A stretch of DNA of 64,000 bases from Octopus sinensis (Eukaryota): the NCBI RefSeq assembly GCF_006345805.1, contig NC_043010.1, positions 62,558,001 to 62,622,000 on the forward strand, in the 5' to 3' direction. Below, in pieces: positions 3,212 through 62,743 of this stretch. A model generated the notes under the pieces. That model saw only the letters and a list, made by a program, of their open reading frames with translations, was not told where the DNA came from and ran no database searches. The number at the start of each line of letters is the position of its first letter. Within the stretch, counting starts at the first letter, position 1. The position numbers were made by a program, and so were the translations under genes.

Positions 3212-4075
3212 AGATTAGACTGGGCCTGGTGCAGCCCCCTGGCTTCCCAGACCCTAGTCGAACCGTCCAAGCCATAGCGGACTTAAACGATAAGAAAAAA
3301 AAATATCATCATTGTCGTCGTTTAATGTCCGCTTTCCATACTGGCATGGGTTGGATGGTTTGACTGAGGACTGGCAAGCTAGGAGGCTGCACCAGGCTCC
3401 AAATCTGATCTGGCAAAGTTTCTGCAGTTGGATGCCCTTCCTAACACCAACCACTCCGAGAGTGTAGTAGGTACTTTTACGCACCACCAGCATGAGGAGC
3501 AGTCTGGCAGTACTGGCAATGACCACACTCAGAAGGTGTTTTTTACATGACACATGCACGGGAGCCAGTCCGCCAGCTCTGGCAACGACCATGCTCGAAT
3601 GTTGTTTTTCATGTGCCACCAGCACATGTGCCAGTAAGGCAACGTTGACAATGAACATGCTCGAATGGTGCTTATTACGTGCCACCTGCATGGGAGCCAG
3701 TCAGTGGCTCTGGCAACAATCACGCTTTTAACGTTCCACTGGCATGATATCTATATGAGAGTTCATTGTTTCACAAGTTACTTGGTGCCACATAAAAAGC
3801 ACCCAGGACACTCTGTAAAGTCAATGGCATTAAGAAGGGCATCTTGCTGTAGAAACCATGCCAAAACAGCCAGGTGGGCCCAGCTCCTGTTGAACTGTCC
3901 AACCCATGCCAGCACGGAAGACAGACATTAAATGATGATGATATCTTTCTCTATCTATCTATCTATCTCATGCCAAAACAGACACAAAAGTCTGGTACAG
4001 TCTTCTGCCTAGCCCGCTTTGGTCAAACCGTCCAACCCATGCCAGCATGGAAGATGGACGTTAAATGATGATGAT
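3212..4075. mobile_element. cluster of family C copies in both orientations (3212-3291 +, 3305-3750 -, 3790-4075 +)
   Basis: Shared CCAACCCATGCCAGCATGGAA...TTAAA(C/T)GATGATG tails and internal ~60-66 bp subrepeats. Confidence 0.7.
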
Positions 4076-9719: not shown

Positions 9720-9739
9720 TTGTGATTGTTTGATAACAG
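9720..9739 (+). promoter_or_regulatory. putative 3' splice acceptor just upstream of the ZNF-1 start codon
   Basis: TTGTGATTGTTTGATAACAG|CCATCAAAATG: T-rich tract with AG at 9738-9739, 8 nt before the ATG at 9748. Confidence 0.4.
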
Positions 9740-9747
9740 CCATCAAA

Positions 9748-12234
9748 ATGAGTATGTACCCGATACAGCCAGCGTACCCCAGTATGGGGGACCACTCCTC
9801 TATATACAACCAATCCATGTATTCGAATCAAAGCACCCATTTGAAAGAGACTGACAAGAACAGCCCATCGCAGGGTGCTAAAGGTTTCCGACAGCCCGAT
9901 ATTCCCCGGAAACATTTCAGCGAAGAAAACGTGCCCCTTATTAACAATGCTGGATCAAGCCAAGAAGAGATTGAAGTGCCAGCCCTTAACACCAGTACCA
10001 CCAACACTCTACCTCCTGTGGCACCTAACAACCAAGACAAAGAACTAACCTGTGCTTTTTGTAAAAAGGTTTTCCCAAACTCCTTTATCTTACGTACACA
10101 CGAACGCATTCACATGGGCGTGCGACCGTTTGCCTGTTCCTTTTGTAACAAGGAATTCTTCCAGTTGGTCGACTTAAAAACGCACTACTGTACGCACAGC
10201 CATGCCACCAATAACATGTCGCTCTCTACAAACCAGAAGGCGTACCAATGTTCAGTGTGTAACAGGAGCTTTGCTCATAGAGGCAACCTGAAGCTTCATC
10301 TGAGGATGCATTCAGGGGACAAACCGTTTGCTTGTGACGTCTGTGGCAAGACTTTCGCACAGAAAAATAGCCTTACCGATCATAAAAGAGTGCATACAGG
10401 AGACTTGTTCTTCTGTCAGTTCTGCCAAAAAGCATTTTGTAACCAGTTTTTCTTGCAGAACCACGAGAGAGCCCACACGGGGGAGAAACCTTTTCATTGT
10501 GATTTCTGTGATAAAGCGTTTTCTCAGAGAGGCAACTTGAAGACACATCTCAGAACACACACAGGTGAGAAGAACTTTGTCTGCGATGCCTGTGGTAAGG
10601 CATTCTCTCAAAAGAACTGCCTGACTGACCACAAACGGCTACACACTGGTGACCTCTTCTACTGTCAGTACTGTAAAAAAGGATTCTGCAATCAGTTTTT
10701 CTTAAAGATTCATGAAAAAGTACACACGGGAGATTTATATTATTGCAACTACTGCAAGAAAGGGTTTCCGAATCAGTTTTTCCTGGAAAACCACACCAGG
10801 TCTCATACTGGAGAGAAACCATTCCGGTGTTTGTTTTGTCCACAAGTTTTTTCACAACGTGGCAATTTAAAGACCCATCTACGAACGCACACAGGGGAGA
10901 AACCCTTCCAGTGTGAAGTTTGTGGCAAGGGTTTTGCACAAAAGACTAATTTAAACGACCACAAAAGACTCCATACCGGAGAGCTTTATTATTGTAACTA
11001 CTGCAAAAAACCATTTTGTAATAAATTCTTCTTAAAAATTCACGAGCGCATACACACAGGGGATTTATTTTACTGCTCTTATTGTAAAAAAGGCTTCACA
11101 AATGAGTTCTTCCTGAAAAACCATCTCAGAGTGCACACAGGGGAGAAACCGTTTCAGTGTGAATTTTGCAATCAAACATTTGCGCAGCGAGGCAACTTGA
11201 AGCAACATTTACGAAAACACACAGGGGAGAAACCATTTAACTGTGAACTTTGTGGCAAGTGTTTCTCTCAGCGAAACAACTTAACCGACCATAAACGTGT
11301 GCATACTGGAGAACTCTTCTTCTGCAGCTTCTGTAAGAAGCCGTTTTGTAACCAGTTTTTCCTAAAAAATCACGAAAGAGCTCACACTGGAGAAAGACCG
11401 TTCCAATGCAACTTCTGCAAGAAAACTTTCTCTCAGAGAGGCAATCTCAAGCTCCACCTTAGGACCCACACTGGGGAAAAGCCTTTTACCTGTAGTGTAT
11501 GCGACAAGTCCTTCTCTCAACGGAATAGTCTCATAGATCACCAGCGGATTCACAGCGGAGATCTATACTTTTGCGGAATTTGTAAGAAGGGCTTCTGTAA
11601 CCAGTTTTTCTTAAAAACTCACGAGAAAACCCATGGAATTGTAGAGGATAGCCAGTCAAAACAGATCAGTTGTGAGTTTTGTGGCGAGGTTTTTGCACAG
11701 CAAAGTGAGTTAAAGGTACACATACAAACTCATACACCGGCGGAGAAACGCTATAGCTGCCAGATTTGCGGGGAGCAGTTTTTACACAGGGTTTCCTTAA
11801 CAAACCATAAATGTCCAGCAGCAAGCAGTAACTCGAACAGCTGCAGGATGTACTCCAAACTGCCCCAACAGACCGTGGAGCCAAGCAGCTCGAACATAAC
11901 AAACGACAAGACTGTATATAATTCGTCTCCCTCATCGTGCGACTCTTTAGCTCATGTCAAGGATATTGTTAGCACACAGAAAATCAGCTCGTTGAAAAAC
12001 AATAGTAGATCTTGTACAACGGTCCAACCGGAGTCGCACCGAGATACACAAGTCCCTCCTGTGCGACCACAGCCATCACCAGCTTCTTCTTCATCATATT
12101 TACATGGCATGCCTCACATTTGGGAAAATAACTACCTCTGGTCACGAGGTTACCCCATGCCACCCCTGTTAGGCTCAAGTTGGGCAGCAAATGTGCCCAG
12201 CGGTGTCTCCTGTGGCCCAAAGCAAACAAAGTAA
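9748..12234 (+). CDS. C2H2 zinc-finger protein, 21 fingers (20 C2H2 + terminal C2HC), 828 aa, single coding exon (ZNF-1)
   Basis: Uninterrupted ORF with repeated CxxC-x3-F-x5-L-x2-H-x3-H fingers and TGEKPF linkers at 10051-11814. The track starts at TTG 9730; the first ATG is at 9748. No KRAB/SCAN/BTB-like domain was recognised. Confidence 0.95.
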   Translation: MSMYPIQPAYPSMGDHSSIYNQSMYSNQSTHLKETDKNSPSQGAKGFRQPDIPRKHFSEENVPLINNAGSSQEEIEVPALNTSTTNTLPPVAPNNQDKELTCAFCKKVFPNSFILRTHERIHMGVRPFACSFCNKEFFQLVDLKTHYCTHSHATNNMSLSTNQKAYQCSVCNRSFAHRGNLKLHLRMHSGDKPFACDVCGKTFAQKNSLTDHKRVHTGDLFFCQFCQKAFCNQFFLQNHERAHTGEKPFHCDFCDKAFSQRGNLKTHLRTHTGEKNFVCDACGKAFSQKNCLTDHKRLHTGDLFYCQYCKKGFCNQFFLKIHEKVHTGDLYYCNYCKKGFPNQFFLENHTRSHTGEKPFRCLFCPQVFSQRGNLKTHLRTHTGEKPFQCEVCGKGFAQKTNLNDHKRLHTGELYYCNYCKKPFCNKFFLKIHERIHTGDLFYCSYCKKGFTNEFFLKNHLRVHTGEKPFQCEFCNQTFAQRGNLKQHLRKHTGEKPFNCELCGKCFSQRNNLTDHKRVHTGELFFCSFCKKPFCNQFFLKNHERAHTGERPFQCNFCKKTFSQRGNLKLHLRTHTGEKPFTCSVCDKSFSQRNSLIDHQRIHSGDLYFCGICKKGFCNQFFLKTHEKTHGIVEDSQSKQISCEFCGEVFAQQSELKVHIQTHTPAEKRYSCQICGEQFLHRVSLTNHKCPAASSNSNSCRMYSKLPQQTVEPSSSNITNDKTVYNSSPSSCDSLAHVKDIVSTQKISSLKNNSRSCTTVQPESHRDTQVPPVRPQPSPASSSSYLHGMPHIWENNYLWSRGYPMPPLLGSSWAANVPSGVSCGPKQTK

Positions 12235-17638: not shown

Positions 17639-18462
17639 CTAGGTTGAAGAAAAATGCTTGTGTGCTGTGTTAAAATAATGATTTTTTTATGCAAGAATTT
17701 ATTCAAAATTAACAACAACTATTCTTCAAAATAAAGGCCATCATTTTCCATGACCTTCTGCCAACAATCTGCAAGCTTTCAGATTTGGTCAAAGTACCAA
17801 TCCTTTGGCTTTCATCATCATCATCATCATTTAGCGTCTGCTTTCCATGCTAGCATGAGTTGGACGGTTCAACTAGGGTCTGTGAAGCCAGAAGGCTGCA
17901 TCTGGCCCAGTCTGATCTGGCAGTGTTTCTACAGCTGGACGCCCTTCCTAACGCCAACCACTCCGTCAGTGTAGTGGGTGTTTTTTACGTGCCACCCGCA
18001 CAGGTGCCAGACAGAGCTGGCAAACGGCCACGGACGGATGGTGCTTTTACGTGCCACCCGCACAGGGGCCAGGCAAGGCTGGCAACGGCCACGAACAGAT
18101 GGTGCTACGAAAAATTCTTGACAGGCTTCTTCAACTTCATCGAATGACTCAAATCGGCAACCTTTCATAAAATGCTGCATTGTTCAGAAGGGACCGTAGT
18201 CAGATGAAGCAACATCTGGACCATAGGCTGGATGCAGCAGAACTTCCACTCCATCCAATTCTTCAGTCTTGTTGCTGGTCTTTCTGACTGTATGTGGCTC
18301 TGCATTGTCTGGTTGAAACAAAGTACATTATTGACAAACAAGTCTTGGGTACTTTTCAACTAACACATCGCAGACTTGATCAAGTTACCCTAGTTAAAGT
18401 TCAGCATTGATGGCACAACCATTCGGCACAAGTTTGGTACACAAACTTTTTCCTCAACCTAA
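17639..18462 (-). mobile_element. internally deleted mariner (DD34D-type) element, split by a family C insertion
   Basis: The minus strand encodes AINAEL...EKYPRLV, QPDNAEPH...EVLLHPAYGPDVASSDY, MQHFMKGCRFESFDEVEEACQEFF and, after the insertion, KPKDWYFDQI*KLADCWQKVMENDGLYFEE*. TIR pair TAGGTTGA(A/G)GAAAAA at both ends, with TA at 18463-64. Confidence 0.85.
17812..18103 (-). mobile_element. family C (RTE 3'-UTR-type) insertion nested in the mariner
   Basis: (CAT)n plus the family C core interrupts the transposase between EFFVA and KPKDW. Confidence 0.75.
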
Positions 18463-21387: not shown

Positions 21388-23095
21388 GAGAGAAAGTGGT
21401 TGGGGTTTATCATTGCAACAGGTAATGATAACATGGTTGTTTCCTCAGAAAGTTAAAACAGTTAAAGACATAAAGCTGGTATTATCTTGAATAGAACTGC
21501 TCCTAAGACCTTGTTTGGATAAAAATCAGCCGATGAGACTTGGAGGTAAGTCATTGAACTTCACATCCTCACAGTTTTATCATCCAACAACAGCTGTGAA
21601 TGATGAGGTGTTGGATCAATTCAGTTACGTATTTGATGAAGAAATCAATCAATCTCTGCCACCAGATGTTCCCATTTTGATTGGAGATGGAAATACTAAG
21701 GTGGAAAAACTAACAACAAAATCAGTAACTGTGGACATTTTCAGTTTGGGCATTGAGAATAATCAGGGAAGCCATTTTGTTGAATTCTGATTATTGAAAT
21801 ATTTTTATTTCTAAAACATGATTTAACCAATATCATAGGCAACTTTACAATTGTATTTTAACTAATTGCAAGCCTCATTAAAAAAAAAAAAGAAATACCA
21901 TTTTATAGTCCAACAACAATGGAAGTGTAGAAAGAAGGTCTGTTAACCCTTTAGTGTTCAGATTATTCTATCAAACATAATGCTTATTGATTCACATTGA
22001 TTTGAATTAATCATGCATTATCTCATATCTTCAAGATCTTGATGGTGTAATTATTTAATGTAGAATAACATAGTAGGGTAGGTGTGAGAGCCTGGATCTG
22101 GTCAGTTTGAACATAAAACAGATTAGCTATTTTGGCCAGTTATGGCCGGTTTAAATACTAATGGGTTAAAACAGGTTAAACTACATTCATCTGCTGATTG
22201 CCAATGATGACCATCGACTTGTTACAATAATTAAATAATATTTCAATAAAAAGATTAAAACATTAAGAAAATACAATTTTGCAAACATTCTAAATAAATG
22301 TAATGTCAAAATAAAAAAAAATATTTCAAAAACTTTGGCAATGTAAAGCGAAAGAGTGACCTGGAAGAACTGTGAAATAAAGCTAAAAAATTGTTTTATA
22401 AATAGCAGGAAAAAATATCAAAGTAAGAGAAAAAAAAAATTACTGAAATGGTTAACAGATGAGACATGAGATAAAACTGAAGAATAAGGACTGTAAAAAA
22501 CTCAGAGATCTGACACCATTTGAATGTAAAGAATGAAAGCAACAATTGAGCAATGAAATTCAATATGTGATAAAAGAAAGAGAAGTAGGAAAACAACAAC
22601 AAAATTTATGATGAGAATGGAAAAAAAATTCAGTAAGAAACACTAATAGAGATCTTTACAAAGCAATGAAGATAATATGAAGAAAATTTGCACCAAGAAT
22701 TGATGTTATCAAAGAGAAATATGGTAATATGCTTTATGAAGGGAAAAGTTTCTACAAAAGATGGAAAGAAAACTGCTGCAGCTTATTCAAGAATACAACA
22801 GGGAATAATCAAAGAGAATGCAATCATAATAATCAAAGTAAAAACTGTGTTAGAGAAAGAGGGAGAGAAAGAGAATGTTTGCCATTCATGTCTGGAGTAA
22901 AAGAGAAATTGTTACAGTGTTTATGTATAAAAATATGGAACCTAAATTTATGGCCAAATGATTGGTCTAAACCAATTTTGATGCCATTGCCAAAGCAAAG
23001 GAAGACATAACACAAGGTAAAGACAACAAGACAAATAATGTGAGTAAAATGTTATTAAAGATCATTGGTGAAGGAATGAAGAATCTTATTTAGAA
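21388..23095 (+). mobile_element. old RTE/BovB-like LINE ORF2 remnant (AP endonuclease to the start of RT), many stops and frameshifts
   Basis: Peptides MRLGGKSLNFTSSQFYHPT...ILIGDGNTKV...FSLGIENNQGSHFVEF, KRWKENCCSLFK and CIKIWNLNLWPNDWSKPILMPLPK match recalled BovB-type motifs (IIGDWNAKVG, KRWQEYTEELY, WPQDWKRSVFIPIPK). Confidence 0.8.
21947..22165. mobile_element. piggyBac-type MITE nested in the LINE remnant
   Basis: TTAA|CCCTTTAGTGTT...AATACTAATGGG|TTAA; same family as 45189-45409. Confidence 0.75.
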
Positions 23096-29383: not shown

Positions 29384-30433
29384 GTGTTGGTTTCGCTGAT
29401 GTTCCGTTATAAATGTAACTTGGGAGATAGTGAAAGGCTGTGGTTAAGGAAACGGTATTTTGTCTTGAAAGTTGCGAATATTTTTTGCAAATCACAGGCA
29501 TATACTCAAACATATGTACTGTACATGTTTATACCCGTATATCGTATATAAGTTGTGTGGGTGTCTATATATATTTGTAAATATATGTACTTAAACGTAT
29601 TGTATACATACATATATATATATATATTGTTGTATATGTAATTATGTGTTTATATTTTATGAGTGTGTTTGTAAATATGTGCATGTATGTATGTTTGTAC
29701 ACATATATGTCATCATCGTCATCATTTTACGTCCGTTTTCGAAGCTGGCATGGGTCGGAGGGTTTGGCAGAACCCAGCGAATGGCACCACTACAACGTGC
29801 TCCAGCTTTGGCAGTATTTCTACGGCCCGATGCCCTTCCTAACGCCAACCACTTTATAGTGCTTACTGGGTGGCTTTTCTCATGTCACCGGCTCCAGCAG
29901 GGTTGCCAAGTAACCTATGTGCACGCGCATGTGTGTGTATGTGTGTATAAATGTTCAGTTTATATATGAATGAATATACATTTGTGTGTGTGTGTTTCGT
30001 GTTTACATTTTCACTGATCACTGATCTACACAAAGTGCAGTTGTCATCTTCCTTGTCAAGAAATATTGTACTGATTTTGCACCCCTGAAAGGCTTATGGA
30101 ATAAAGAGATCCTTTACTCAGAAAACAGATAATGGCTTTAATGAGAGGGGCTTCTTCAGGAAGCCTAAATACGGACTATGAAGAAAGAACTTAAAGATTG
30201 CTTCTTGGGAAGGCTCAAAATATGGCCTGAGCACAAGATCAAAGAGGAAATTTATGGACACATTCCACCCATCTTCATTAGTATTGCTCAACACAGTACA
30301 GGCTTTAGTAGCCAATGTTTTTGTCCTGAACAGCAGACCATATCAAGATGTTATATTTTGATGAATTCTATACCTCAATGGGGGACAAAGATCTATTCAG
30401 TTACAGATGATGTTATTAGTAGAGAAAAACAAC

Positions 30434-30800
30434 TAGCTTGCTTACCAACCACATGGTTCTGGGTTCAGTCCCACTGCGTGGCACCTTGGACAAGTGTCAT
30501 CTACTATAGCTTCGGGCCAACCAAAGCCTTGTGAGTGGATTTGGTAGACAGAAACTGAAAGAAGTCCATTGTTTATATGTATATATATGTGTGTGTGTGT
30601 TTCTGTGTCTGTCTTTGTCCCCCCAACATCACTTGACAACCGATGTTGGTGTGTTTACATCCCCGTAACTTAGCAGTTCAGTAAAAGAGACTGATAGAAT
30701 AAGTACTAGGCTTACAAAGAATAAGTCCTGGGGTCAATTTCCTTGACTAAAGGCGGTGTTCCAGCATGGCCACAGTCAAATGACTGAAACAAGTAAAAGA
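30434..30800 (+). mobile_element. tRNA-derived SINE (family A), 5'-truncated
   Basis: GGGTTCAGTCCCACTGCGTGGCACCTTGG...(TG)n...CAGCATGGCC...GAAACAAGTAAAAGA. Confidence 0.8.
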
Positions 30801-31249
30801 GTATGATATTGAGTACTTGCTGTAACTATCGGTGGTTGGAAATTTCTGGTGCAGCATGCTGAAATGTGTCTTAGTTGTGGCCTCTTGAAGAAGATTAACT
30901 TAATTTTCAGGCAGAATCAAAATTAATGATGTATGTATGTATGTATGTATGTAGTATGTATGTATGTATGTATGTATGTATGTATGTATGTATGTATGTG
31001 TGAGAGAGAGAGAGACATGGTTCAGCCTTTGAATTATAGATGCAATCCAACCAACCAGGGTCTCCATCTCCTCAATTTCATTCACAAAATATAGATTGAC
31101 CCAGAGCTATAGAAAGTAGTTGCCCAAGATGTCACTTGACACTCTTTGTATTAGGGATCATAAACCTACCTCAGAACCTATTGTAGCATCTCCAATCCAA
31201 GAAATATGTCTGTGTGTGTGTGAGGAGGGGGAAACATCTCCAGCTATCC

Positions 31250-33010: not shown

Positions 33011-34224
33011 TGGCACTGTGTTGTCTGCCTTGTCTGGTTTGTGGATATTTAAATTTAAATGCCTTTTCAGACCCGTGTGTCGCTTGGAGGTCTTACTACA
33101 AATATGGCACATGAGTGTGTCTGCTGGAATGAACTTTGTATCATTTGGGCCAGCCGCATAAAGATGAGTTCTGAGATGTGCTTTCGAAACAAAAAACTCA
33201 TACCCCAGATTCAGCAACTGAGGGATGACTCCATTTCTGCATTTGACACACTGTTACAGTTCTGTAGTTCTCTTTTCATTTTTGAGGCAGATTTTTTTAT
33301 AGTTTGATGCCCTTCCTGCCATCACTCGTCACCACTCATGCACACACAAATATATGTGACTGGCTTCGTTTAGTTTCCATCTACCAAATTCTCTCACAAG
33401 ACTTTGGTTGACCCAGGGCTATAGTAGAGAACACTTGCACCAAGTGCCATGTGGTGATATTGAACCTGAAAGTAAGAGGTTGGGAAGCAAGCTTCTTGAC
33501 CACATAGCCATGTCTGCACACACACACACACACACACACATGCATGGCCCTCGTGCCAGTGGCGCGTAAAAGCACCCACTACACTCTTGGATTGGTTGGT
33601 GTTGGGAAGTATGCATGCCACAGCAAACAGGTAGGGATTGAGGCTGTCTTCTTATTTGCCGGCTCCTATTAAACCGTCCAACCCATGCCATCATGGAAAA
33701 TGAACAATGATGATGATGTATATCCAGGCTGAATGGTCCTTCCTGATCCCTAGGCTCAGAAGGCCAATTTCCCACTTTCTATGATGTGTATATTCTTACC
33801 TTGGACGGGACCCCAGTCTGTTGCAGCTGAGTGGTTTGCATCAACATCAAATAAAATATTTTACTCCAAGAATACAATGCATCGCCCAGTCTGGGAATCG
33901 AACTCACACTCTTATGATGATGAGTGCAACAGCCTCACCACTAAGTCATATGCCTCCACATATATTTATGGTGTGTTAATATTAGGTGCTTCTGCACCGA
34001 AAATATTCAAAAAGCTTAAATATCTGATAAGATTACTTATCATTATTCGTGTTATTTTTTTAAACAGAACTCTTGATAGGCAAAGGCGTGGCTGTGTGAT
34101 ACGAAGTGAGTGGTTCCGGGTTCAGTCCCACTGCATGGCACCTTGGGCAAGTGTCTTCTACTTTAGCTTCAGGCAAATCAAAGCCTTGTGAGTGGATTTG
34201 ATAAACAGAAACTGAAAGAAGCCT

Positions 34225-36127: not shown

Positions 36128-36289
36128 GGCGCAGGAGTGGCTGTGTGGTAAGTAGCTTGCTTACCAACCACACGGTTCCGGGTTCAGTCCCACTGCGTGG
36201 CACCTTGGGGAGTGTCTTCTACTATAGCATCGGGCCGACCAAAGCCTTGTGAGTGGATTTGGTAGACGGAAACTGAAAGAAGCCTGTCG

Positions 36290-36320
<31 letters not shown>

Positions 36321-36519
36321 TTGTCTGTCTTTGTCCCCCCAACATCGCTTGACAACCGATGCTGGTATGTTTACATCCCCGTTACCTAGCGGTTCGGCAA
36401 AAGAGACCGATAGAATAAGTACTGGGCTTACAAAGAATAAGTCCTGGGGTCGATTTGCTCGACTAAAAGGTGGTGCTCCAGCATGGCCGCAGTAAAATGA
36501 CTGAAACAAGTAAAAGAGA
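36128..36519 (+). mobile_element. family A SINE, full length, young
   Basis: GGCGCAGGAGTGGCTGTGTGGTAAG head, GGGTTCAGTCCC B-box-like motif, CpGs retained. Confidence 0.85.
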
Positions 36520-36973
36520 AAGAGAGTATATATACTCACACACACACACATATATATACATATGTGGTTATATTTTATCAGTTCTGATGCTCCAATTCCT
36601 TTCTACCCCTTATTATTTACCATTCCATTCCACGGTTGCAGCCTTGAATGGTACCGATGCCATATTGCTACCTCTGTGAGAAGAAATTGGTAGTTCCTTT
36701 CTCAAACATTCACCATTTTTGATTAAAGGAATGTTGTGGGTGATCGTCCATAAGTCTTCTTAGGGTGGCATGTAACCAATTTATGCAAAAAAAGGGGGAC
36801 GGAGATGTGGAAGTCTAATCCTTAGGCTGCTATTTTATTTAACCACCCTGGAAAGATGAAAGGCAAATTGGGCCCCAGTAGGGTTTGAACTCAGAAAACA
36901 ACAAATTAGAACCGTTTTAGCTGACACTTCAATAACTGCCAAATTCCCCATTTCTCCAACGTTGAAATATTTG

Positions 36974-37111: not shown

Positions 37112-37945
37112 CATCCTCCTCCTCCTCATCATCGTTTAACATCTGTTTTCCATGCTGGCGTGGGTTGGACGGTTTGACTGGGGTCTGGAGAGTCAGCAGC
37201 TGCACCAGGCTCCATTCTGATCTGGCAGAGTTTCTACAGCTGGATGCCCTTCCTCATGCCAACCACTCCAAGAGTGTAGTGGGTGCTTTTTACGTTCCAC
37301 TAGCACAGGAGCCAGTCAGGCGGTCCTGGCATCAATTATGTTTGGATAGTGCTTTTTACGTGCTACAGGCACCGGGACCGGTCAGTGTGCTATGGCATTG
37401 GACACATTCGGGTGGTGCTTTTAATGTACCACCGGTAGAGGAGCCAGTCAGGCAGCCCTGGCATTGATCACATTCGGATAGTGCTTTCTATGTGCCACCA
37501 GTACAGAAGCCAGTCAAGGGACACTGGCATCGGCCACGTTCGGGTGGTGCTTTTTACATGCTACGGGTATGGCATCGGCCATGTTCAGGTGGTGCTTTTT
37601 ACATGCCACTCTGCAGATGAGCCAGTCAGGCGGCCCTGACATCGATCATATTCAAATAGTGCTTTCTATGTGCTGCTGGTACAGGAGCCAGTCAGGGGAC
37701 ACTGGCATCAGCCATGTTCAGGTGGTGCTTTGTACATGCTATGGGCACAGGATCCAGTCAGGGGGCTATAGCATCGGCCACGTTCGGGTGGTGCTTTTTA
37801 CATGCCACTCCGCAGAAGAGCCAGTCAGGTGGCTCTGGCATCGATCACGTTCAAATAGTGCTTTCTATGTGCCACCGGTACAGAAGCCAGTCAGGGGAGA
37901 CTGGCATCAGCCATGTTGAGGTGATGCATTTTACGTGCCACATTG
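37110..37945 (-). mobile_element. family C copy with about 10 internal 66-bp tandem repeats
   Basis: GTGCTTT unit starts at 37283, 37349, 37415, 37481, 37547, 37592, 37659, 37725, 37791, 37858 and about 37924. Confidence 0.85.
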
Positions 37946-39695: not shown

Positions 39696-40201
39696 ATGTA
39701 CCAGATGCAGTGTGGGGGAAAGCAACAACAGTTTAACAACAACTGTTGTGGTATTAATAATGATAGTCAGGCTGAGGTACACACTTGCGGTGGAACGGCA
39801 TCACAGAACGGATTTACAAACTTTATGGAGCTGATCAAGAAACCAGACAAGTCCCGGGACAAACCTTTCAAATGTGGAATATGCCGTAAAGGATTTACGT
39901 TGAAAGCCTACCTGAATCGACACCTGTTGGCCCCTGAGCCCGGTAAACACTTCCCCTGCAGTTATTGCAGCAAGATCTTTCCGCAGAGGGACCGCCTCGA
40001 GACGCACGAACGCACTCACACGGGGGTCAAGCCGTTTGTCTGCAACATCTGCTCCAAGTCGTTTTCACAGAAGTCACACCTGAACACCCACAAGCACGTC
40101 CACACCGGCACAAAGTCGCCAAACGCCGTCGACCGGAGCATGAAGCGCCGCAAGACCCTGGCGATGACCATGATGATGAATTCCATGCAACAGCATCAGC
40201 A

Positions 40202-40233
<32 letters not shown>

Positions 40234-41414
40234 AGCAGCAACATCATCACCACCATCAGCATCACCAGCACCACCAACAACATCAGCACCACCTTCAACA
40301 TCAGCATCAGCATCAACACCAGCATCAACACCACCAACATCAACACCAGCATCAACACCACCAACATCAGCATCAGCATCATCAACACCAGCATCATCAG
40401 CATCATCATCAGTTCCATCATTTCGAGAACCACAGCAAGACCTGCCCCCAGCATCTTAACCAGGTGGGCAAACGTAAAAGCGGGCCCGGCAGCGCAGATA
40501 AACCCTTTAAGTGTGATGTATGCCGGAAAGGCTTCACCCTGAAGGCCTACCTCAACCGTCACTTATTGGCTCCTGATACAGGTAAACACTTCCCTTGCTC
40601 TTACTGCCACAAGGTTTTTCCCCAAAGGGACCGACTGGAGAATCACGAAAGGACTCATACTGGGGTGAAACCATTCCATTGTACAATTTGTGGCAAGAAC
40701 TTTGCCCAAAAGTCCCATTTAAACAAGCACCAAAATGTGCACAAAGCGGACCGGATGTCAGCAACCAGTGTGCCTTCAGCTTCAGTCACATCAACCTCGT
40801 CGTCATCGGGCGCTAACCAAGCCCCAAACCTTCCTAAACCTCCATCGATGATTTCACCTCAAGCTTCGTCATCTTCAGGGACCTACACTACCCAGATGAT
40901 TAACCAAACTGCGGCGATCCACAAACAGGCTGTTATGACAACAAACACACAGTATTCACAACAGCAGATCAAATATTCTACTGCGGCCCCACAGCAGCAG
41001 CAGCAGCAACAACAGCAGCAACAACAACAACAACAACAACAACAGCAACCAGCTGCCCAGAAAGATCCATCGACAATGTCGGCCTGCTCGCATCAGATGA
41101 TGCATCAACATGCGCCGCTAAGGCAACAACAGCAGCAACAGCCGCAGCAGCAGCAGCAGGCGCCGCCGCCGCCGCCTCCGCCACCATCTCAGCAGTCATC
41201 GAACATGACTGCAACCTCGACAATGAACACGGCCACCTACCATCAACAGATGGTGCCGCAAAGAGCTGCTGAGAATAATTACAACTGGAAGCGTAACGCT
41301 GCCATAACGGCCAACTGGAATGCAGGCTGGACCAACACATCGAACCCGACTTATGGCCAGAGGAAATGCGAGAGCCAGGAGGCTGTCCACAACATTCAGA
41401 CATTGATGCAGTGA
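39696..41414 (+). CDS. C2H2 zinc-finger protein with two 3-finger cassettes, a Q/H tract and polyQ; 572 aa, single coding exon (ZNF-2)
   Basis: Uninterrupted ORF; in-frame stop at 39678-80 upstream, first ATG at 39696. Cassettes at 39861-40109 and 40500-40748; basic NLS-like KRRK and KRK motifs. Confidence 0.93.
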
Positions 41415-47210: not shown

Positions 47211-47480
47211 AAAATATTTTCTTTTGAACTAAGTTTTTTCCTCCATCACTTAGCCCATGATTAATTGAAGGGAAAGGAAAGAGTGAAAGAAAGGGAGAGT
47301 AAATGAGGGAGAGTGCTGTATATTAAAGTCTATAAAATTGTGAATTAAGTAACCAATTTCTTTCTGTTTTCAATTATTAGTAGATGAGCAATTATCTTTT
47401 GATACCGACACAACACAGGCCATGCTTACAGGTGTTTTGCATGAAGTTTTCAGAAATAACCCAATAAGCTTACTATTAAT

Positions 47481-47678
47481 TCTCTTTTACTTGTTACAGT
47501 CATTTTGACTGCGGCCATGCTGGAGCACTGCCTGTAGTCGAGTAAATCGACCCCAGGACTTATTCTATGGAAGCCTAGTACTTATTCTGTCGGTCTCTTT
47601 TGCCGAACTACTAAGTTACGGGGACGTAAAACACACCAACATCGGTTGTCAAGCGATGTGGGGGGGGGACAAACATAT

Positions 47679-47731
<53 letters not shown>

Positions 47732-47890
47732 TACGACGGGCTTCTTTCAGTTTCCGTCTACCAAATCCACTGAAGGTTTCGGTCGGCCCGAGGCTATAGT
47801 AGAAGACACTTGCCCAAGGTGCCACACAGTGGGAATGAACCTGGAACCTTGTGGTTGGTAAGCAAGCTACTTACCACACAGCCACTCCTG
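47481..47890 (-). mobile_element. family A SINE, full length
   Basis: Reverse complement of 36128-36519. Confidence 0.85.
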
Positions 47891-48070
47891 AGAAATATTC
47901 ACGGGTCCTACTAGCTATTATAATTAGTAGAGTGTTAGACAAAATATCTGTACTTGTGAACCAAGATGTCCTGTTCACTGCTGCAATGCTTTTAACCCAT
48001 TTCTTACTCTATCTCTCTTGAAATGCACTGCTTTTGTTTCAGCTAATTCTGAGAATAATGAACAATTTAA

Positions 48071-50860: not shown

Positions 50861-51468
50861 CCAGGAATCTCGGTCCCCTGTCATCCCCTCTGTGGATCCC
50901 AGGAATCTCGGTCCCCTGTCATCCCCTCTGTGGATCCCAGGAATCTCGGTCCCCTGCCATCCCCTCTGTGGATCCCAGGAATCTCGGTCCCCTGCCATCC
51001 CCTCTGTGGATCCCAGGAATCTCAGTCCCCTTTCATCCCCTCTGTGGATCCCAGGAATCTTGGTCCCCTGTCATCCCCTCTGTGGATCCCAGGAATCTCG
51101 GTCCCCTGTCATCCCTTCTGTGGATCCCAGGAATCTCGATCCCCTGTCATCCCTTCTGTGGATCCCAGGAATCTCAGTCCCCTGTCATCCCCTCTGTGGA
51201 TCCCAGGAATCTCAGTCCCCTTTCATCCCCTCTGTGGATCCCAGGAATCTCGGTCCTCGGTTATCCCCTTTGTGGATCCCAGGAATCTCGGTCCCCTGTC
51301 ATCCCCTCTGTAAATCCCAGAAATCTCGATCCCCTGTCATCCCCTCTGTGGATCCCAGGAATCTCGGTCCCCTGTCATCCCCTCTGTGGATCCCAGGAAT
51401 CTTGATCCCCTGTCATCCCCTTTGTGGATCCCAGGAATCTCAGTCCCCTGTCATCCCCTCTGTGGATC
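50861..51468. repeat. minisatellite, 16 x 38 bp (CCAGGAATCTCGGTCCCCTGTCATCCCCTCTGTGGATC)
   Basis: Unit starts every 38 nt from 50861 to 51431; no spacers. Confidence 0.95.
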
Positions 51469-52269
51469 CCAACTGGTCTTTATTTTATTGACCCCGAAAG
51501 AGTAAAAGGTAAAGTCAACCCTGGTGGTATTTGAACCCAGGAGGAGAAATCGGAAGAAAAACCGTTAAGCCTTTTTTCTGTCATCATAACAACCTTACCA
51601 CCTTACAAGTGAATATAATACTGCTTTCAAATTTTTGGCACAAGGCCGGCAATTTCAGAGGATGTGGTAATTCTGACCCCACTACTTATTTTATGGACCC
51701 CGAAATGTAAGGACGGACAGAATGTTGCTAAGTAATTTTTCCAGCATGGTTACAAGTCTGCTAGCTCCCTGCCTTACAAGTGAATATAATATTGATTTCA
51801 AATTTTGGCACAAGGCCAGCAATTTGGTGGAATGGGGCATGTCAATTACACTGGCACCAGTAGTCAACTGGTACTTATTTTATAAGCCCTGAAAGGATGA
51901 AAGACAAAGTCAACCCCTGCAGAAATTGAACTCAGAATGCAAAGACAGGCGCTAAGCATTTCACCGGGCATGCTAACGATTCTGCCAGTTTGACACCTTT
52001 CTAACAAAAGCAATACTGGTTTCATATTTTGGCACAAGGCCAGCAATTTTGGAGGGGGGGGGCAGGTAAATCAACTTCATTGACCCAAGAGCTCAGATCA
52101 TACTTATTTTACTGACCCCCAAAAGGCCCTAAGTAATGCTTTTTACAATGTGTAGTTAAACCTGGAGCTGTTTCTGGACAATGACCGTAATTTAAATCAT
52201 TTTGGAACTTGCTGTGTTGAAGTTTACTGAGGTTGGGTCAAGATTTTGAGGGAAATCCTTCCAGTTTAC

Positions 52270-62115: not shown

Positions 62116-62144
<29 letters not shown>

Positions 62145-62146
<2 letters not shown>

Positions 62147-62535
62147 TTATAATTGTTTCACTAATTTGACTGTGGCCATGCTGGAGTACTGCCTTTAGTC
62201 GAGCAAATCAATCCCAGAGCTTATTCTTTGTAAGCCTAGTCCTTATTCTATCGGTCTCTTTTGCCGAACCACTAAGTTATGGGGATGTAAACACACCAAC
62301 ATCGGTTGTCAAGCGATGTTAGGGGGACAAACACACACACACAGACATGCCCACACACACACATATATATATACATGCAATGGGCTTCTTTCAGTTTCCA
62401 TCTATCAAATCCACTCACAAGGCTTTGGTTGGCCTGAGGCTAAAGTAGAAGACACTTGCCCAAGGTGCCATGCAGTGGGACTGAACCCGGAACCATGTGG
62501 TTGGTAAGCAAGCTACTTACCACACAGCCACTCCT
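62145..62535 (-). mobile_element. family A SINE
   Basis: Reverse complement of the family A body. Confidence 0.8.
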
Positions 62536-62743
62536 ATATATAGAAGAGGCTTCTTTCAGTTTCCAGCTACCAGACCCACTTACAAAGTTTTGGGTAGCAT
62601 ACTTTATGGTTTATAATCACATAGGTATGTTTGTACCAATGTTACGTGTGTGTGTATGTGTGTGTATGTGTGTGTGTGTGTGTATGTGTGTATATATGTA
62701 TGCATGTATAATGTATACCTATGTGTGCATATATATGTACATA

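What the first reader, a model, noticed from the sequence alone, without database searches (positions are those of the whole stretch)
12124..12183. Shared C-terminal motif ENNYxW[SK]R-x11-W in both ZNF proteins (ZNF-1 copy): candidate undescribed effector motif
Seen: ZNF-1 ends ...HIW-ENNYLWSR-GYPMPPLLGSS-W-AAN, and ZNF-2 (41271-41330) ends ...RAA-ENNYNWKR-NAAITANWNAG-W-TN. Seven residues (E,N,N,Y,W,R,W) are identical at identical spacing, near both C-termini, inside low-complexity tails that otherwise do not align. The finger arrays also differ completely. The N-termini are weakly alike too (MYPIQ vs MYQMQ). Known: vertebrate and insect ZNF expansions rely on effector modules (KRAB, SCAN, ZAD), and W-containing short motifs such as WRPW recruit co-repressors. 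I recognise no such module here. Inference: this may be a cofactor-docking motif that defines a cephalopod ZNF subfamily.
Basis: partly seen in the sequence, partly recalled or inferred. Interest (0 to 1): 0.82.

Follow-up and report, generated by a model that had tools for sequence, protein, structure and literature searches.

The report
Conserved tryptophan-rich tail of cephalopod zinc-finger proteins
The short motif shared by the two zinc-finger genes is real: it is the core of a 45-90-residue, probably unstructured C-terminal module kept for a very long time in a small family of octopus and cuttlefish zinc-finger proteins. No database or paper searched describes it, and its function, most plausibly binding a partner protein, is untested.

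Summary
Taken alone, the two-copy match is only borderline significant. Homologues settle the question.

An exhaustive profile search of 1.84 billion proteins gave 8 credible hits. All are cephalopod C2H2 proteins or their fragments (Octopus, Sepia pharaonis, unnamed assemblies), and all carry the block 35-61 residues from the C-terminus. A local HMM added three or four more.

E and R are not conserved. The invariant residues are Y-x-W, and a W 14 residues on is nearly invariant. The consensus is SWENNYxWSRGFPxxPxWxxxWxN, inside a longer block.

The block is an island of conservation:
- ZNF-1 versus Octopus P0123: 35/45 identical in the block, 39/176 in the rest of the tail.
- 20 of 21 core residues are identical, 13 of them through different codons.

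AlphaFold2 predicts no fold. Pfam and PDB searches give nothing significant. No KRAB, SCAN, ZAD or BTB domain is present. A matching N-terminal motif (MYPxQPxYP...) accompanies the block in most members.

So "defines a cephalopod ZNF subfamily" is supported. "Cofactor docking" is a reasonable inference that remains untested. The family looks small, with about 9 lineages seen. It is a new accessory module of a known general kind, of moderate interest.

The parts
9754..12234 (+). ZNF-1 coding sequence: one uninterrupted ORF of 826 aa plus stop. It has an N-terminal motif, 20 canonical C2H2 fingers and a C-terminal tail.
   Evidence: The start at 9754 (MYPIQP) is chosen by homology to MYPVQP, MYSFQP and MFPMQP in relatives. 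It is 49% identical over 582 aa to Octopus P0123/P0130.
9754..9858 (+). ZNF-1 N-terminal family motif MYPIQPAYPSMGDHSSIYNQSMYSNQSTHLKETDK.
   Evidence: It aligns with P0123, P0125 and the L006 protein as M[YF]PxQPx[YF]PxGxQxxF...[HY]LKxxEK.
10051..11733 (+). ZNF-1 array of 20 C2H2 fingers, with a repeating three-finger unit and short HTG[DE]L[FY][FY]C linkers.
12031..12231 (+). ZNF-1 conserved C-terminal block: ESHRDTQ...RPQ...YLHGMPHIWENNYLWSRGYPMPPLLGSSWAANVPSGVSCGPKQTK.
   Evidence: It scores 88.7 bits against the family HMM. Alignments are A3 to A5. Against Octopus P0123 it is 35/45 identical from YLH to KQxK, compared with 39/176 in the rest of the tail.
12121..12183 (+). ZNF-1 core WENNYLWSRGYPMPPLLGSSW.
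   Evidence: 20 of 21 residues are identical to Octopus P0123/P0130, and 13 of those use different codons.
39696..41414 (+). ZNF-2 coding sequence: one ORF of 572 aa plus stop. It has an MYQMQ N-terminus, two three-finger blocks separated by a poly-Q/His tract, and a Q/P-rich tail.
   Evidence: The closest relatives are P0010 (65% over the first finger block) and P0017/P0138.
39873..40103 (+). ZNF-2 finger block 1. Its first finger is atypical (CGICRKGFTLKAYLNRHLLAPEPGKH).
   Evidence: The same atypical finger occurs in P0010, P0017 and P0138.
40512..40742 (+). ZNF-2 finger block 2, an old internal duplicate of block 1.
   Evidence: Compared with the preceding KPFK included on both sides, 66/81 aa and 173/243 nt are identical, and 36 identical residues use different codons.
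41268..41330 (+). ZNF-2 core AENNYNWKRNAAITANWNAGW, a degenerate copy of the family core.
   Evidence: The ZNF-2 tail scores 77.0 bits against the family HMM, which it helped to build.
41364..41411 (+). ZNF-2 extreme C-terminus KCESQEAVHNIQTLMQ, a second conserved element specific to the ZNF-2 lineage.
   Evidence: P0138 ends KCESQETAHNIQTLLQ and P0017 ends KCEGQETTHNIQTLLQ.

Best explanation
The two motif copies are the cores of one homologous C-terminal module. The module belongs to a small, old family of intronless C2H2 zinc-finger genes of coleoid cephalopods (octopus and cuttlefish lineages).

A family member has three parts:
- a short Pro/Tyr-rich N-terminal motif, M[YF]PxQPx[YF]PxGxQ...;
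- a finger array that differs greatly in number and type between paralogues;
- a low-complexity tail ending in the conserved block ...RxQ...(W)xxSxxL[HQ]xMxxSWENNYxWSRGFPxxPxWxxxWxNxPSxxxC..K..K.

Shown here: the block is under purifying selection at the protein level, it always sits near the C-terminus, and it is predicted to have no stable fold of its own.

Inferred: it works as a short linear binding motif. A partner common to the family grips its invariant Tyr and Trp side chains, and usually Phe and Pro too, possibly with folding on binding. The finger arrays would choose the DNA sites and the tail would bring the same co-regulator to them. The N-terminal motif may be a second contact for that partner. 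The partner, and whether it activates or represses, are unknown.
For: 1. Exhaustive profile search (3 tails, 40 positions) of 1.84 billion representative proteins gave 10 hits at E <= 1e-3. Two are multi-stretch repeat artefacts. The other 8 each match once, near the C-terminus.
2. Those with source names are from Octopus vulgaris, O. sinensis, O. bimaculoides and Acanthosepion (Sepia) pharaonis.
3. The two apparently fingerless hits are not fingerless genes. P0128 is a gene model that skips the fingers of a 703-aa uninterrupted ORF. P0126 is the tail of a 13-finger transcript contig with a frameshift.
4. An HMM built from 9 tails finds further members that were not used to build it. They had been collected only for finger similarity: P0017 (28.7 bits), P0007 and its match, the second ORF of the Sepia locus (27.9 and 28.6 bits), and a weak P0105. 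None of the other ZNF hits matches.
5. Selection. The ZNF-1 and Octopus P0123 cores share 20 of 21 residues, 13 through different codons. Block against rest of tail: 35/45 vs 39/176. ZNF-2 against P0138: 24/47 vs 46/209. The Octopus-Sepia pair P0123/P0127 keeps the block while the rest of the tail is full of indels.
6. AlphaFold2 with 9- and 11-sequence alignments gives mean pLDDT 57 and 56, pTM 0.12-0.13 and no secondary structure.
7. There are no significant Pfam or PDB relatives, and no KRAB, SCAN, ZAD or BTB domain in 10 members.
8. The N-terminal motif co-occurs with the block.
9. Expression is likely. The L006 contig ends in poly(A), and P0017 and P0007-type ORFs recur in many short assembled contigs.
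Against: - No partner was identified and no binding or reporter data exist.
- The alignments behind the structure predictions are shallow, so a small fold could have been missed.
- ZNF-2 has lost several near-consensus residues (the W before E, and GFP). A single shared pocket-binding mode may therefore not hold for all members, or ZNF-2 may be losing the function.
- ZNF-1 lacks the last roughly 25 residues of the block seen in P0123, P0125 and P0127.
- Family size and taxonomic range are lower bounds from one weak profile search. The word-indexed searches missed even known members.
Confidence: 0.6

Rival explanations
1. Chance resemblance between two low-complexity tails.
For: A gapped local alignment of the two tails is not significant (818 of 3000 shuffles reach it).
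Against: ENNY occurs nowhere else in the six-frame translation. The 8-residue window is reached by only 3 of 2000 shuffles. The decisive point is that at least 9 further cephalopod ZNF lineages carry the same block at the same position.
Confidence: 0.01
2. A neutral leftover of common descent: the genes are duplicates and the tail has simply not yet diverged.
For: Family members lie in tandem, about 30 kb apart on the same strand. This holds for ZNF-1 and ZNF-2 in the window and for two members in the Sepia locus L005.
Against: Synonymous positions are largely changed while the residues are kept: 13 of 20 identical residues use different codons. The rest of the tail has diverged to about 22% identity, with indels. 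The block is shared between octopus and cuttlefish lineages.
Confidence: 0.03
3. The block is a signal that acts on the protein itself, such as nuclear import or retention, a degron, or self-association (for example an N-terminal to C-terminal contact or dimerisation), rather than a site that recruits a transcriptional cofactor.
For: It is disordered, terminal and aromatic/proline-rich. It is paired with a conserved N-terminal Pro/Tyr motif. A basic KQSK stretch follows the core in many members.
Against: No canonical import or degradation motif was recognised by eye. The block's length and its several invariant aromatic residues are more than such signals usually need. None of this was tested.
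Confidence: 0.25
4. A small autonomously folded domain, for example a WW-like beta-sheet. The W-to-W spacing of 20 residues followed by a proline in some members invites the comparison.
For: In several members, W...W is spaced 20 apart and followed by P (WENNY...CWPNVP).
Against: AlphaFold2 gives no secondary structure and pLDDT of about 56 in two runs. Pfam WW and all other models are silent even at E <= 10. PDB profile search gives only chance-level hits. The first W is absent from ZNF-2, P0010 and P0017.
Confidence: 0.08

Closest known systems
Lineage-restricted accessory modules of C2H2 families (KRAB, SCAN, ZAD, BTB/POZ, FiNZ)
   Same: A conserved non-finger module is attached to rapidly varying finger arrays in tandemly duplicated genes, is restricted to one animal lineage and defines a subfamily. 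That these modules are known is general knowledge and is also covered in PMC10547256.
   Different: There is no sequence relationship: Pfam finds none of these modules in 10 members. This module is C-terminal, not N-terminal. It is predicted disordered, not folded. The family seen is about 9 lineages, not hundreds. The name 'KRAB' given to two Sepia proteins by their source is not backed by any KRAB match.
C-terminal WRPW/WRPY and eh1 peptides that recruit Groucho/TLE (from memory)
   Same: A short Trp-containing peptide near the C-terminus of a DNA-binding transcription factor that works by docking a co-repressor.
   Different: No WRPW or WRPY tetrapeptide is present in any member (sequences). 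The block is much longer and is not at the extreme end. Binding was not tested.
Tryptophan motifs in disordered regions: GW182/TNRC6 W-motifs, and the aromatic PIWI-binding stretch of the zinc-finger protein GTSF1
   Same: Several Trp residues, many flanked by G, S, T or N (SW, WS, GWT), sit in an unstructured region. In GW182 such WG/S/T and G/S/TW motifs recruit CCR4-NOT (PMC5314787). In mouse GTSF1, W98, W107 and W112 mediate PIWI binding (PMC9385479).
   Different: The resemblance is one of pattern only. Here the invariant unit is Y-x-W within a fixed 21-residue frame, not loose repeats. These proteins are multi-finger C2H2 proteins, presumably DNA-binding. No sequence homology was found.
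PEX5 di-aromatic WxxxF/Y peptides (from memory)
   Same: In most members the core reads as two such pentapeptides back to back: W-E-N-N-Y and W-S-R-G-F.
   Different: ZNF-2, P0010 and P0017 lack the first W, and ZNF-2 also lacks the F. The context is nuclear zinc-finger proteins. No helix is predicted.
BET bromodomain BD1 helix segment 'RLENNYYW' (BRD2)
   Same: It shares the string ENNY-x-W and is the best PDB hit.
   Different: E = 0.56 over 19 profile positions, which is chance level. The segment lies inside a folded helical domain and nothing else aligns.

Membership tests
KRAB-ZNF | KRAB box (PF01352) N-terminal to the fingers | tested here: not met
   No PF01352 match in ZNF-1, ZNF-2, P0123, P0125, P0124, P0129, P0010, P0007, P0017 or the 703-aa Sepia ORF.
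SCAN-, ZAD- or BTB-ZNF | SCAN (PF02023), ZAD (PF07776) or BTB (PF00651) domain | tested here: not met
   None was detected in the same 10 proteins.
WRPW/Groucho-recruiting factors | WRPW or WRPY tetrapeptide at or next to the C-terminus | tested here: not met
   The tetrapeptide is absent from all tails read.
WRPW/Groucho-recruiting factors | Binding to the Groucho/TLE WD40 domain | not testable with these tools
   This needs a binding assay or complex modelling with cephalopod Groucho.
WW domain | Match to the WW profile and a three-stranded sheet | tested here: not met
   No Pfam hit even at E <= 10 on 9 tails. AlphaFold2 predicts no strands.
GW182-type W-motif or Ago-hook | Trp flanked by G, S or T in a disordered region | tested here: inconclusive
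   Some Trp residues fit (LWS and SSW in ZNF-1, GWT in ZNF-2) and others do not (IWE, NWK, NWN). Disorder is predicted.
GW182-type W-motif or Ago-hook | Binding to CNOT9, Argonaute or PIWI Trp pockets | not testable with these tools
   No interaction data are available.
PEX5-type WxxxF/Y motif | W-x-x-x-[FY] pentapeptide | tested here: inconclusive
   Present twice in ZNF-1, P0123, P0125, P0126, P0128, P0129 and P0007. Only the second is present in P0010 and P0017, and neither in ZNF-2.
The family proposed here (coleoid ZNFs with the NNYxW tail) | C-terminal block with N-N-Y-x-W and a W 14 residues on, within about 35-61 residues of the stop, in a C2H2 protein | tested here: met
   ZNF-1 scores 88.7 bits and ZNF-2 77.0 bits against the family HMM, which both helped to build. 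Independent members were found by the exhaustive search.
The family proposed here (coleoid ZNFs with the NNYxW tail) | N-terminal M[YF]PxQPx[YF]P motif | tested here: inconclusive
   Clear in ZNF-1, P0123, P0125 and the L006 protein. Variant forms occur in P0007 and P0149. Only MYQ..GKQ remains in ZNF-2 and the Sepia 703-aa ORF. It is absent from P0010.

The most novel reading that the evidence does not exclude
The Trp-rich disordered tail is a 'tryptophan hook' of the kind used by GW182 and GTSF1. Under this reading, sequence-specific DNA-binding zinc-finger proteins of cephalopods would bring an Argonaute/PIWI- or CCR4-NOT-type silencing machine, or another Trp-pocket protein, directly to chromosomal sites. 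That would be a cephalopod-specific counterpart of the KRAB-KAP1 arrangement, built from a different part. Nothing here tests it; only the pattern of Trp residues in a disordered, conserved tail allows it.
Probability: 0.05. Interest if true: 0.85.

Novelty: new variant of a known kind. Interest (0 to 1): 0.5.

Why it matters
Cephalopods have one of the largest zinc-finger gene repertoires of any animal, and much of it is expressed in the nervous system (PMC12513265). Unlike mammalian KRAB or insect ZAD proteins, they have no described non-finger module that says what their zinc-finger proteins do once bound.

The papers checked do not mention this block. Pfam has no model for it. The block gives three practical things:
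- a sequence handle (an HMM) to pull out one old, coleoid-wide family;
- a short peptide with obvious point mutants (Y and W) for pull-downs and reporter assays;
- a test case for how a disordered terminal motif survives while finger arrays are rebuilt.

The limits are that the family is small and the function is unknown.

Tried and rejected
1. Word-indexed homology search with the 140-aa ZNF-1 tail gave no hits at E <= 10. The same tool with the 9-tail alignment returned only P0126. Known members share 18 identical residues with the query, so these negatives reflect the index, not biology.
2. Full-length ZNF-2 search was swamped by generic ZNFs. It was useful only because it brought in P0010, P0007, P0017 and P0105.
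3. P0121 (translation of a tandem repeat) and P0122 (a repeat protein that looks bacterial) ranked top in the exhaustive search through 12-13 weak stretches each. I rejected both as artefacts.
4. Exact-product look-ups of ZNF-1 (two alternative starts) and ZNF-2 found no gene on record, so the window's species and annotation stay unknown.
5. Conserved gene order: in O. bimaculoides, P0130 and P0010 are on the same chromosome but about 17 Mb apart. No orthologous pairing with the window's 30-kb pair could be shown.
6. Octopus bimaculoides against O. vulgaris gave 30 synonymous and 3 non-synonymous codon differences over the gene. There were none in roughly the last 94 codons, too few to test the block itself.
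7. WW-domain, bromodomain and Pfam ideas were rejected.
8. Two structure predictions gave no fold, so I ran no fold search.
9. Literature searches found no description. The 2015 octopus genome paper was not held.
Full report
**1. What is in the window**

Two complete intronless ORFs lie on the + strand about 30 kb apart.

ZNF-1 (ORF 9730-12234; start by homology at 9754; 826 aa) has 20 canonical C2H2 fingers and a 140-aa tail.

ZNF-2 (39696-41414; 572 aa) has two three-finger blocks separated by a poly-Q/His tract, followed by a roughly 220-aa Q/P-rich tail.

Pfam finds only zinc-finger models in both. Apart from one isolated finger-like string at 33041-33109 (-), the window holds no other finger gene.

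**2. The observation**

E, N, N, Y, W, R and W match at the same spacing, starting 36 and 47 residues before the stops. ENNY occurs nowhere else in the six-frame translation.

As a two-sequence observation it is borderline:

| Test | Observed | Shuffles reaching it |
|---|---|---|
| Best ungapped 8-residue window | 37 | 3 of 2000 |
| 21-residue window | 40 | 51 of 2000 |
| Gapped local alignment of whole tails | 48 (background 43.8 +/- 7.7) | 818 of 3000 |

**3. Homologues decide it**

A full-length ZNF-2 search brought in Octopus bimaculoides P0010. It shares ZNF-2's unusual first finger and ends ...VNNYNWSAGFPVTPTWAAAWTNT.... This tail is significantly similar to both window tails (reached by 1 of 3000 and 0 of 3000 shuffles). 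It also bridges them.

A 40-position profile of the three tails was then scored against all 1.84 billion representative proteins. Ten proteins reached E <= 1e-3:
- Two (P0121, P0122) are repeat proteins that score through 12-13 weak stretches. They are artefacts.
- The other eight (P0010, P0123-P0129) each match once, close to the C-terminus.

Source names place them in Octopus vulgaris/sinensis (P0123), O. bimaculoides (P0130, P0010) and Acanthosepion (Sepia) pharaonis (P0124, P0128, P0129, P0136). The rest come from unnamed assembled read sets.

The two hits that seemed to lack fingers are artefacts of annotation or assembly:
- P0128 is a gene model that skips the fingers of an uninterrupted 703-aa ORF (L005 10001-12112).
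- P0126 is the tail of a 13-finger transcript contig with a frameshift before the tail (L006).

An HMM from nine tails, run locally, found further members that had been collected only for finger similarity:
- P0017/P0138, with tail ANHY/ANNY-AWTNGFPVSSTWATGWVN...KCE.QE..HNIQTLLQ. Its last 16 residues nearly match those of ZNF-2.
- P0007, which matches a second ORF 30 kb downstream in the same Sepia locus (WSNHYGWPRGFPVTPRW).
- A degenerate copy in P0105/P0149.

None of the other ZNF hits, from insects, vertebrates, bivalves, a limpet and a chiton, matched. Neither did O. vulgaris P0066.

About nine paralogous lineages are therefore visible, several of them in both the octopus and cuttlefish branches. 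This is a lower bound, because it rests on one search with a weak profile.

**4. Anatomy of the module**

The 11-tail alignment gives this consensus:

...RxQ......S...S..L..M..SWENNYxWSRGFPxxPxWxxxWxNxPSxxxC..K..KQ...

- Y and the W two residues later are invariant.
- The W 14 residues further on is nearly invariant.
- N-N, S-R-G-F-P and the W before E are common.
- ZNF-1 carries a near-consensus core but stops at KQTK, about 25 residues short of the P0123, P0125 and P0127 ends.
- ZNF-2 is the most degenerate copy, but it has its own conserved extreme C-terminus.

Most members also begin with a related N-terminal motif:
- ZNF-1: MYPIQPAYPSMG...
- P0123: MYSFQPVFPMGNQ...
- P0125: MYPVQPMYPGSNQ...
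- L006: MFPMQPMYPMGKQ...
- P0149: MYAFPSLYAMGNHQ...

In ZNF-2 (MYQMQCGGKQQQF) only a remnant is left.

All genes that could be examined on genomic DNA are single uninterrupted ORFs.

**5. Constraint**

| Comparison | Block | Rest of tail |
|---|---|---|
| ZNF-1 vs Octopus P0123 | 35/45 identical | 39/176 |
| ZNF-2 vs P0138 | 24/47 | 46/209 |

In the 21-codon core of ZNF-1 against Octopus P0123, 20 residues are identical and 13 of them use different codons.

The Octopus P0123 and Sepia P0127 pair keeps YLHEMPQSWESNYLW.R.YP.PPLLGS.WP..PS.Y....KQSK...WN...G.H.PSKS, while the rest of the tail is full of indels.

Together this shows amino-acid-level purifying selection on an island inside a fast-evolving tail. 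O. bimaculoides against O. vulgaris is too close to add to this (30 synonymous and 3 non-synonymous differences, none in the block).

**6. Structure and known relatives**

AlphaFold2 was run on the ZNF-1 tail (9-sequence alignment) and on the fuller P0125 tail (11 sequences). It gave mean pLDDT 57 and 56, pTM 0.12-0.13 and no secondary structure. Confidence rose slightly over WSRGFPVPP.

Pfam at E <= 10 gave only scattered single-member noise. A PDB profile search gave only the BRD2 bromodomain string RLENNYYW at E = 0.56, which is chance level. No KRAB, SCAN, ZAD or BTB domain occurs in ten members, although two Sepia proteins are named 'KRAB' by their source.

The two recent papers on cephalopod and metazoan ZNF expansions do not mention any such motif. 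PMC12513265 does describe a coleoid-wide duplication phase. A family shared by octopus and cuttlefish would fit it.

**7. Organism**

The window shares dozens of short interspersed repeats with Octopus loci, at up to 97% identity. It shares almost none with the Sepia or ENA loci. It therefore comes from an octopod near Octopus. Its two proteins are not on record.

**8. How it most likely works**

Shown: this is a conserved, terminal module that is predicted to be unstructured and is specific to the family.

Inferred: it is a linear binding motif. A common partner holds its invariant aromatic side chains, so that different finger arrays bring the same partner to different sites. The N-terminal motif is a possible second contact.

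Pattern-level leads only:
- Back-to-back W-x-x-x-Y and W-x-x-x-F pentapeptides in most members.
- Several Trp residues flanked by S, G, T or N, as in GW182 W-motifs (PMC5314787) or the Trp-dependent PIWI-binding stretch of GTSF1 (PMC9385479).

A self-directed signal (localisation, turnover or self-association) is the main rival. Chance and neutral descent are excluded.

**9. Verdict**

It is a new accessory module within the known general kind of ZNF-attached lineage-specific modules. Interest is moderate, because the family is small and the function unknown, although the module is easy to test.

Noticed in passing
window 10333-11634: The ZNF-1 finger array is built from a repeating three-finger unit (QRGNLKxHLRTH / QKNxLxDHKRxH / CNQFFLKxHExxH). 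The second and third fingers of each unit are joined by a short HTG[DE]L[FY][FY]C linker, one residue shorter than the canonical TGEKP[FY]xC linker. The same unit and linker occur in Octopus P0123 and Sepia-type P0125.
   Followed up: partly
window 39873-39956 and 40512-40595: The first finger of each ZNF-2 block is atypical: C-x2-C-x12-H followed by LLAPEPGKH, with the next His nine residues on. The same odd finger is conserved in P0010, P0017 and P0138 (CRKGFTL[KR].YL..H.LAPE..KH).
   Followed up: partly
window 39861-40103 vs 40500-40742; 40187-40412: ZNF-2 contains an old internal duplication of its three-finger block (66/81 aa and 71% nt identity; 36 identical residues use different codons). 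The copies flank a poly-Q/His tract. The relative P0138 does not have this duplicate.
   Followed up: partly
window 21943-22169, 30431-30807, 36132-36525, 47477-47897, 62141-62540 and others: Many copies of short interspersed repeats are shared with Octopus vulgaris, O. sinensis and O. bimaculoides loci at 70-97% identity. They are nearly absent from the Sepia and ENA loci, which places the window in an octopod near Octopus.
   Followed up: partly
window 50861-51471: A 38-bp unit is repeated 16 times at 93% identity. It gives overlapping ORFs in three frames.
   Followed up: no
window 3475-3717, 17983-18106, 37391-37941: Related tandem units of about 66 bp (TTTTACGTGCCACC.GCAC.GGAGCCAGTCAG...) recur at three places. 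They are probably parts of one repeat family.
   Followed up: no
window 33041-33109 (-): An isolated C2H2-like string (CHICSKTSKRHTGLKRHLNLNIH) lies outside any long ORF. It may be chance or a remnant.
   Followed up: no
L005 10001-12112 and 40738-42801 (Acanthosepion pharaonis CAHIKZ030000917.1): The annotated model P0128 (CAE1244983.1, 301 aa, spanning 28 kb) omits the fingers of an uninterrupted 703-aa ORF. A second family member lies 30 kb downstream on the same strand, mirroring the spacing of ZNF-1 and ZNF-2 in the window.
   Followed up: partly
L006 58-1506 and 1472-1942 (Logan SRR27666067 contig, poly(A) at the 3' end): A polyadenylated transcript contig of a 13-finger family member has a +1 frameshift between the fingers and the conserved tail. 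This could be an assembly error, a pseudogene or something real.
   Followed up: no
P0123 vs P0127 tails: The Octopus-Sepia orthologues share two further small conserved islands in the tail: CELF.KNPQN, and C.LF.K.PPLPQPPP. Both are absent from ZNF-1.
   Followed up: no
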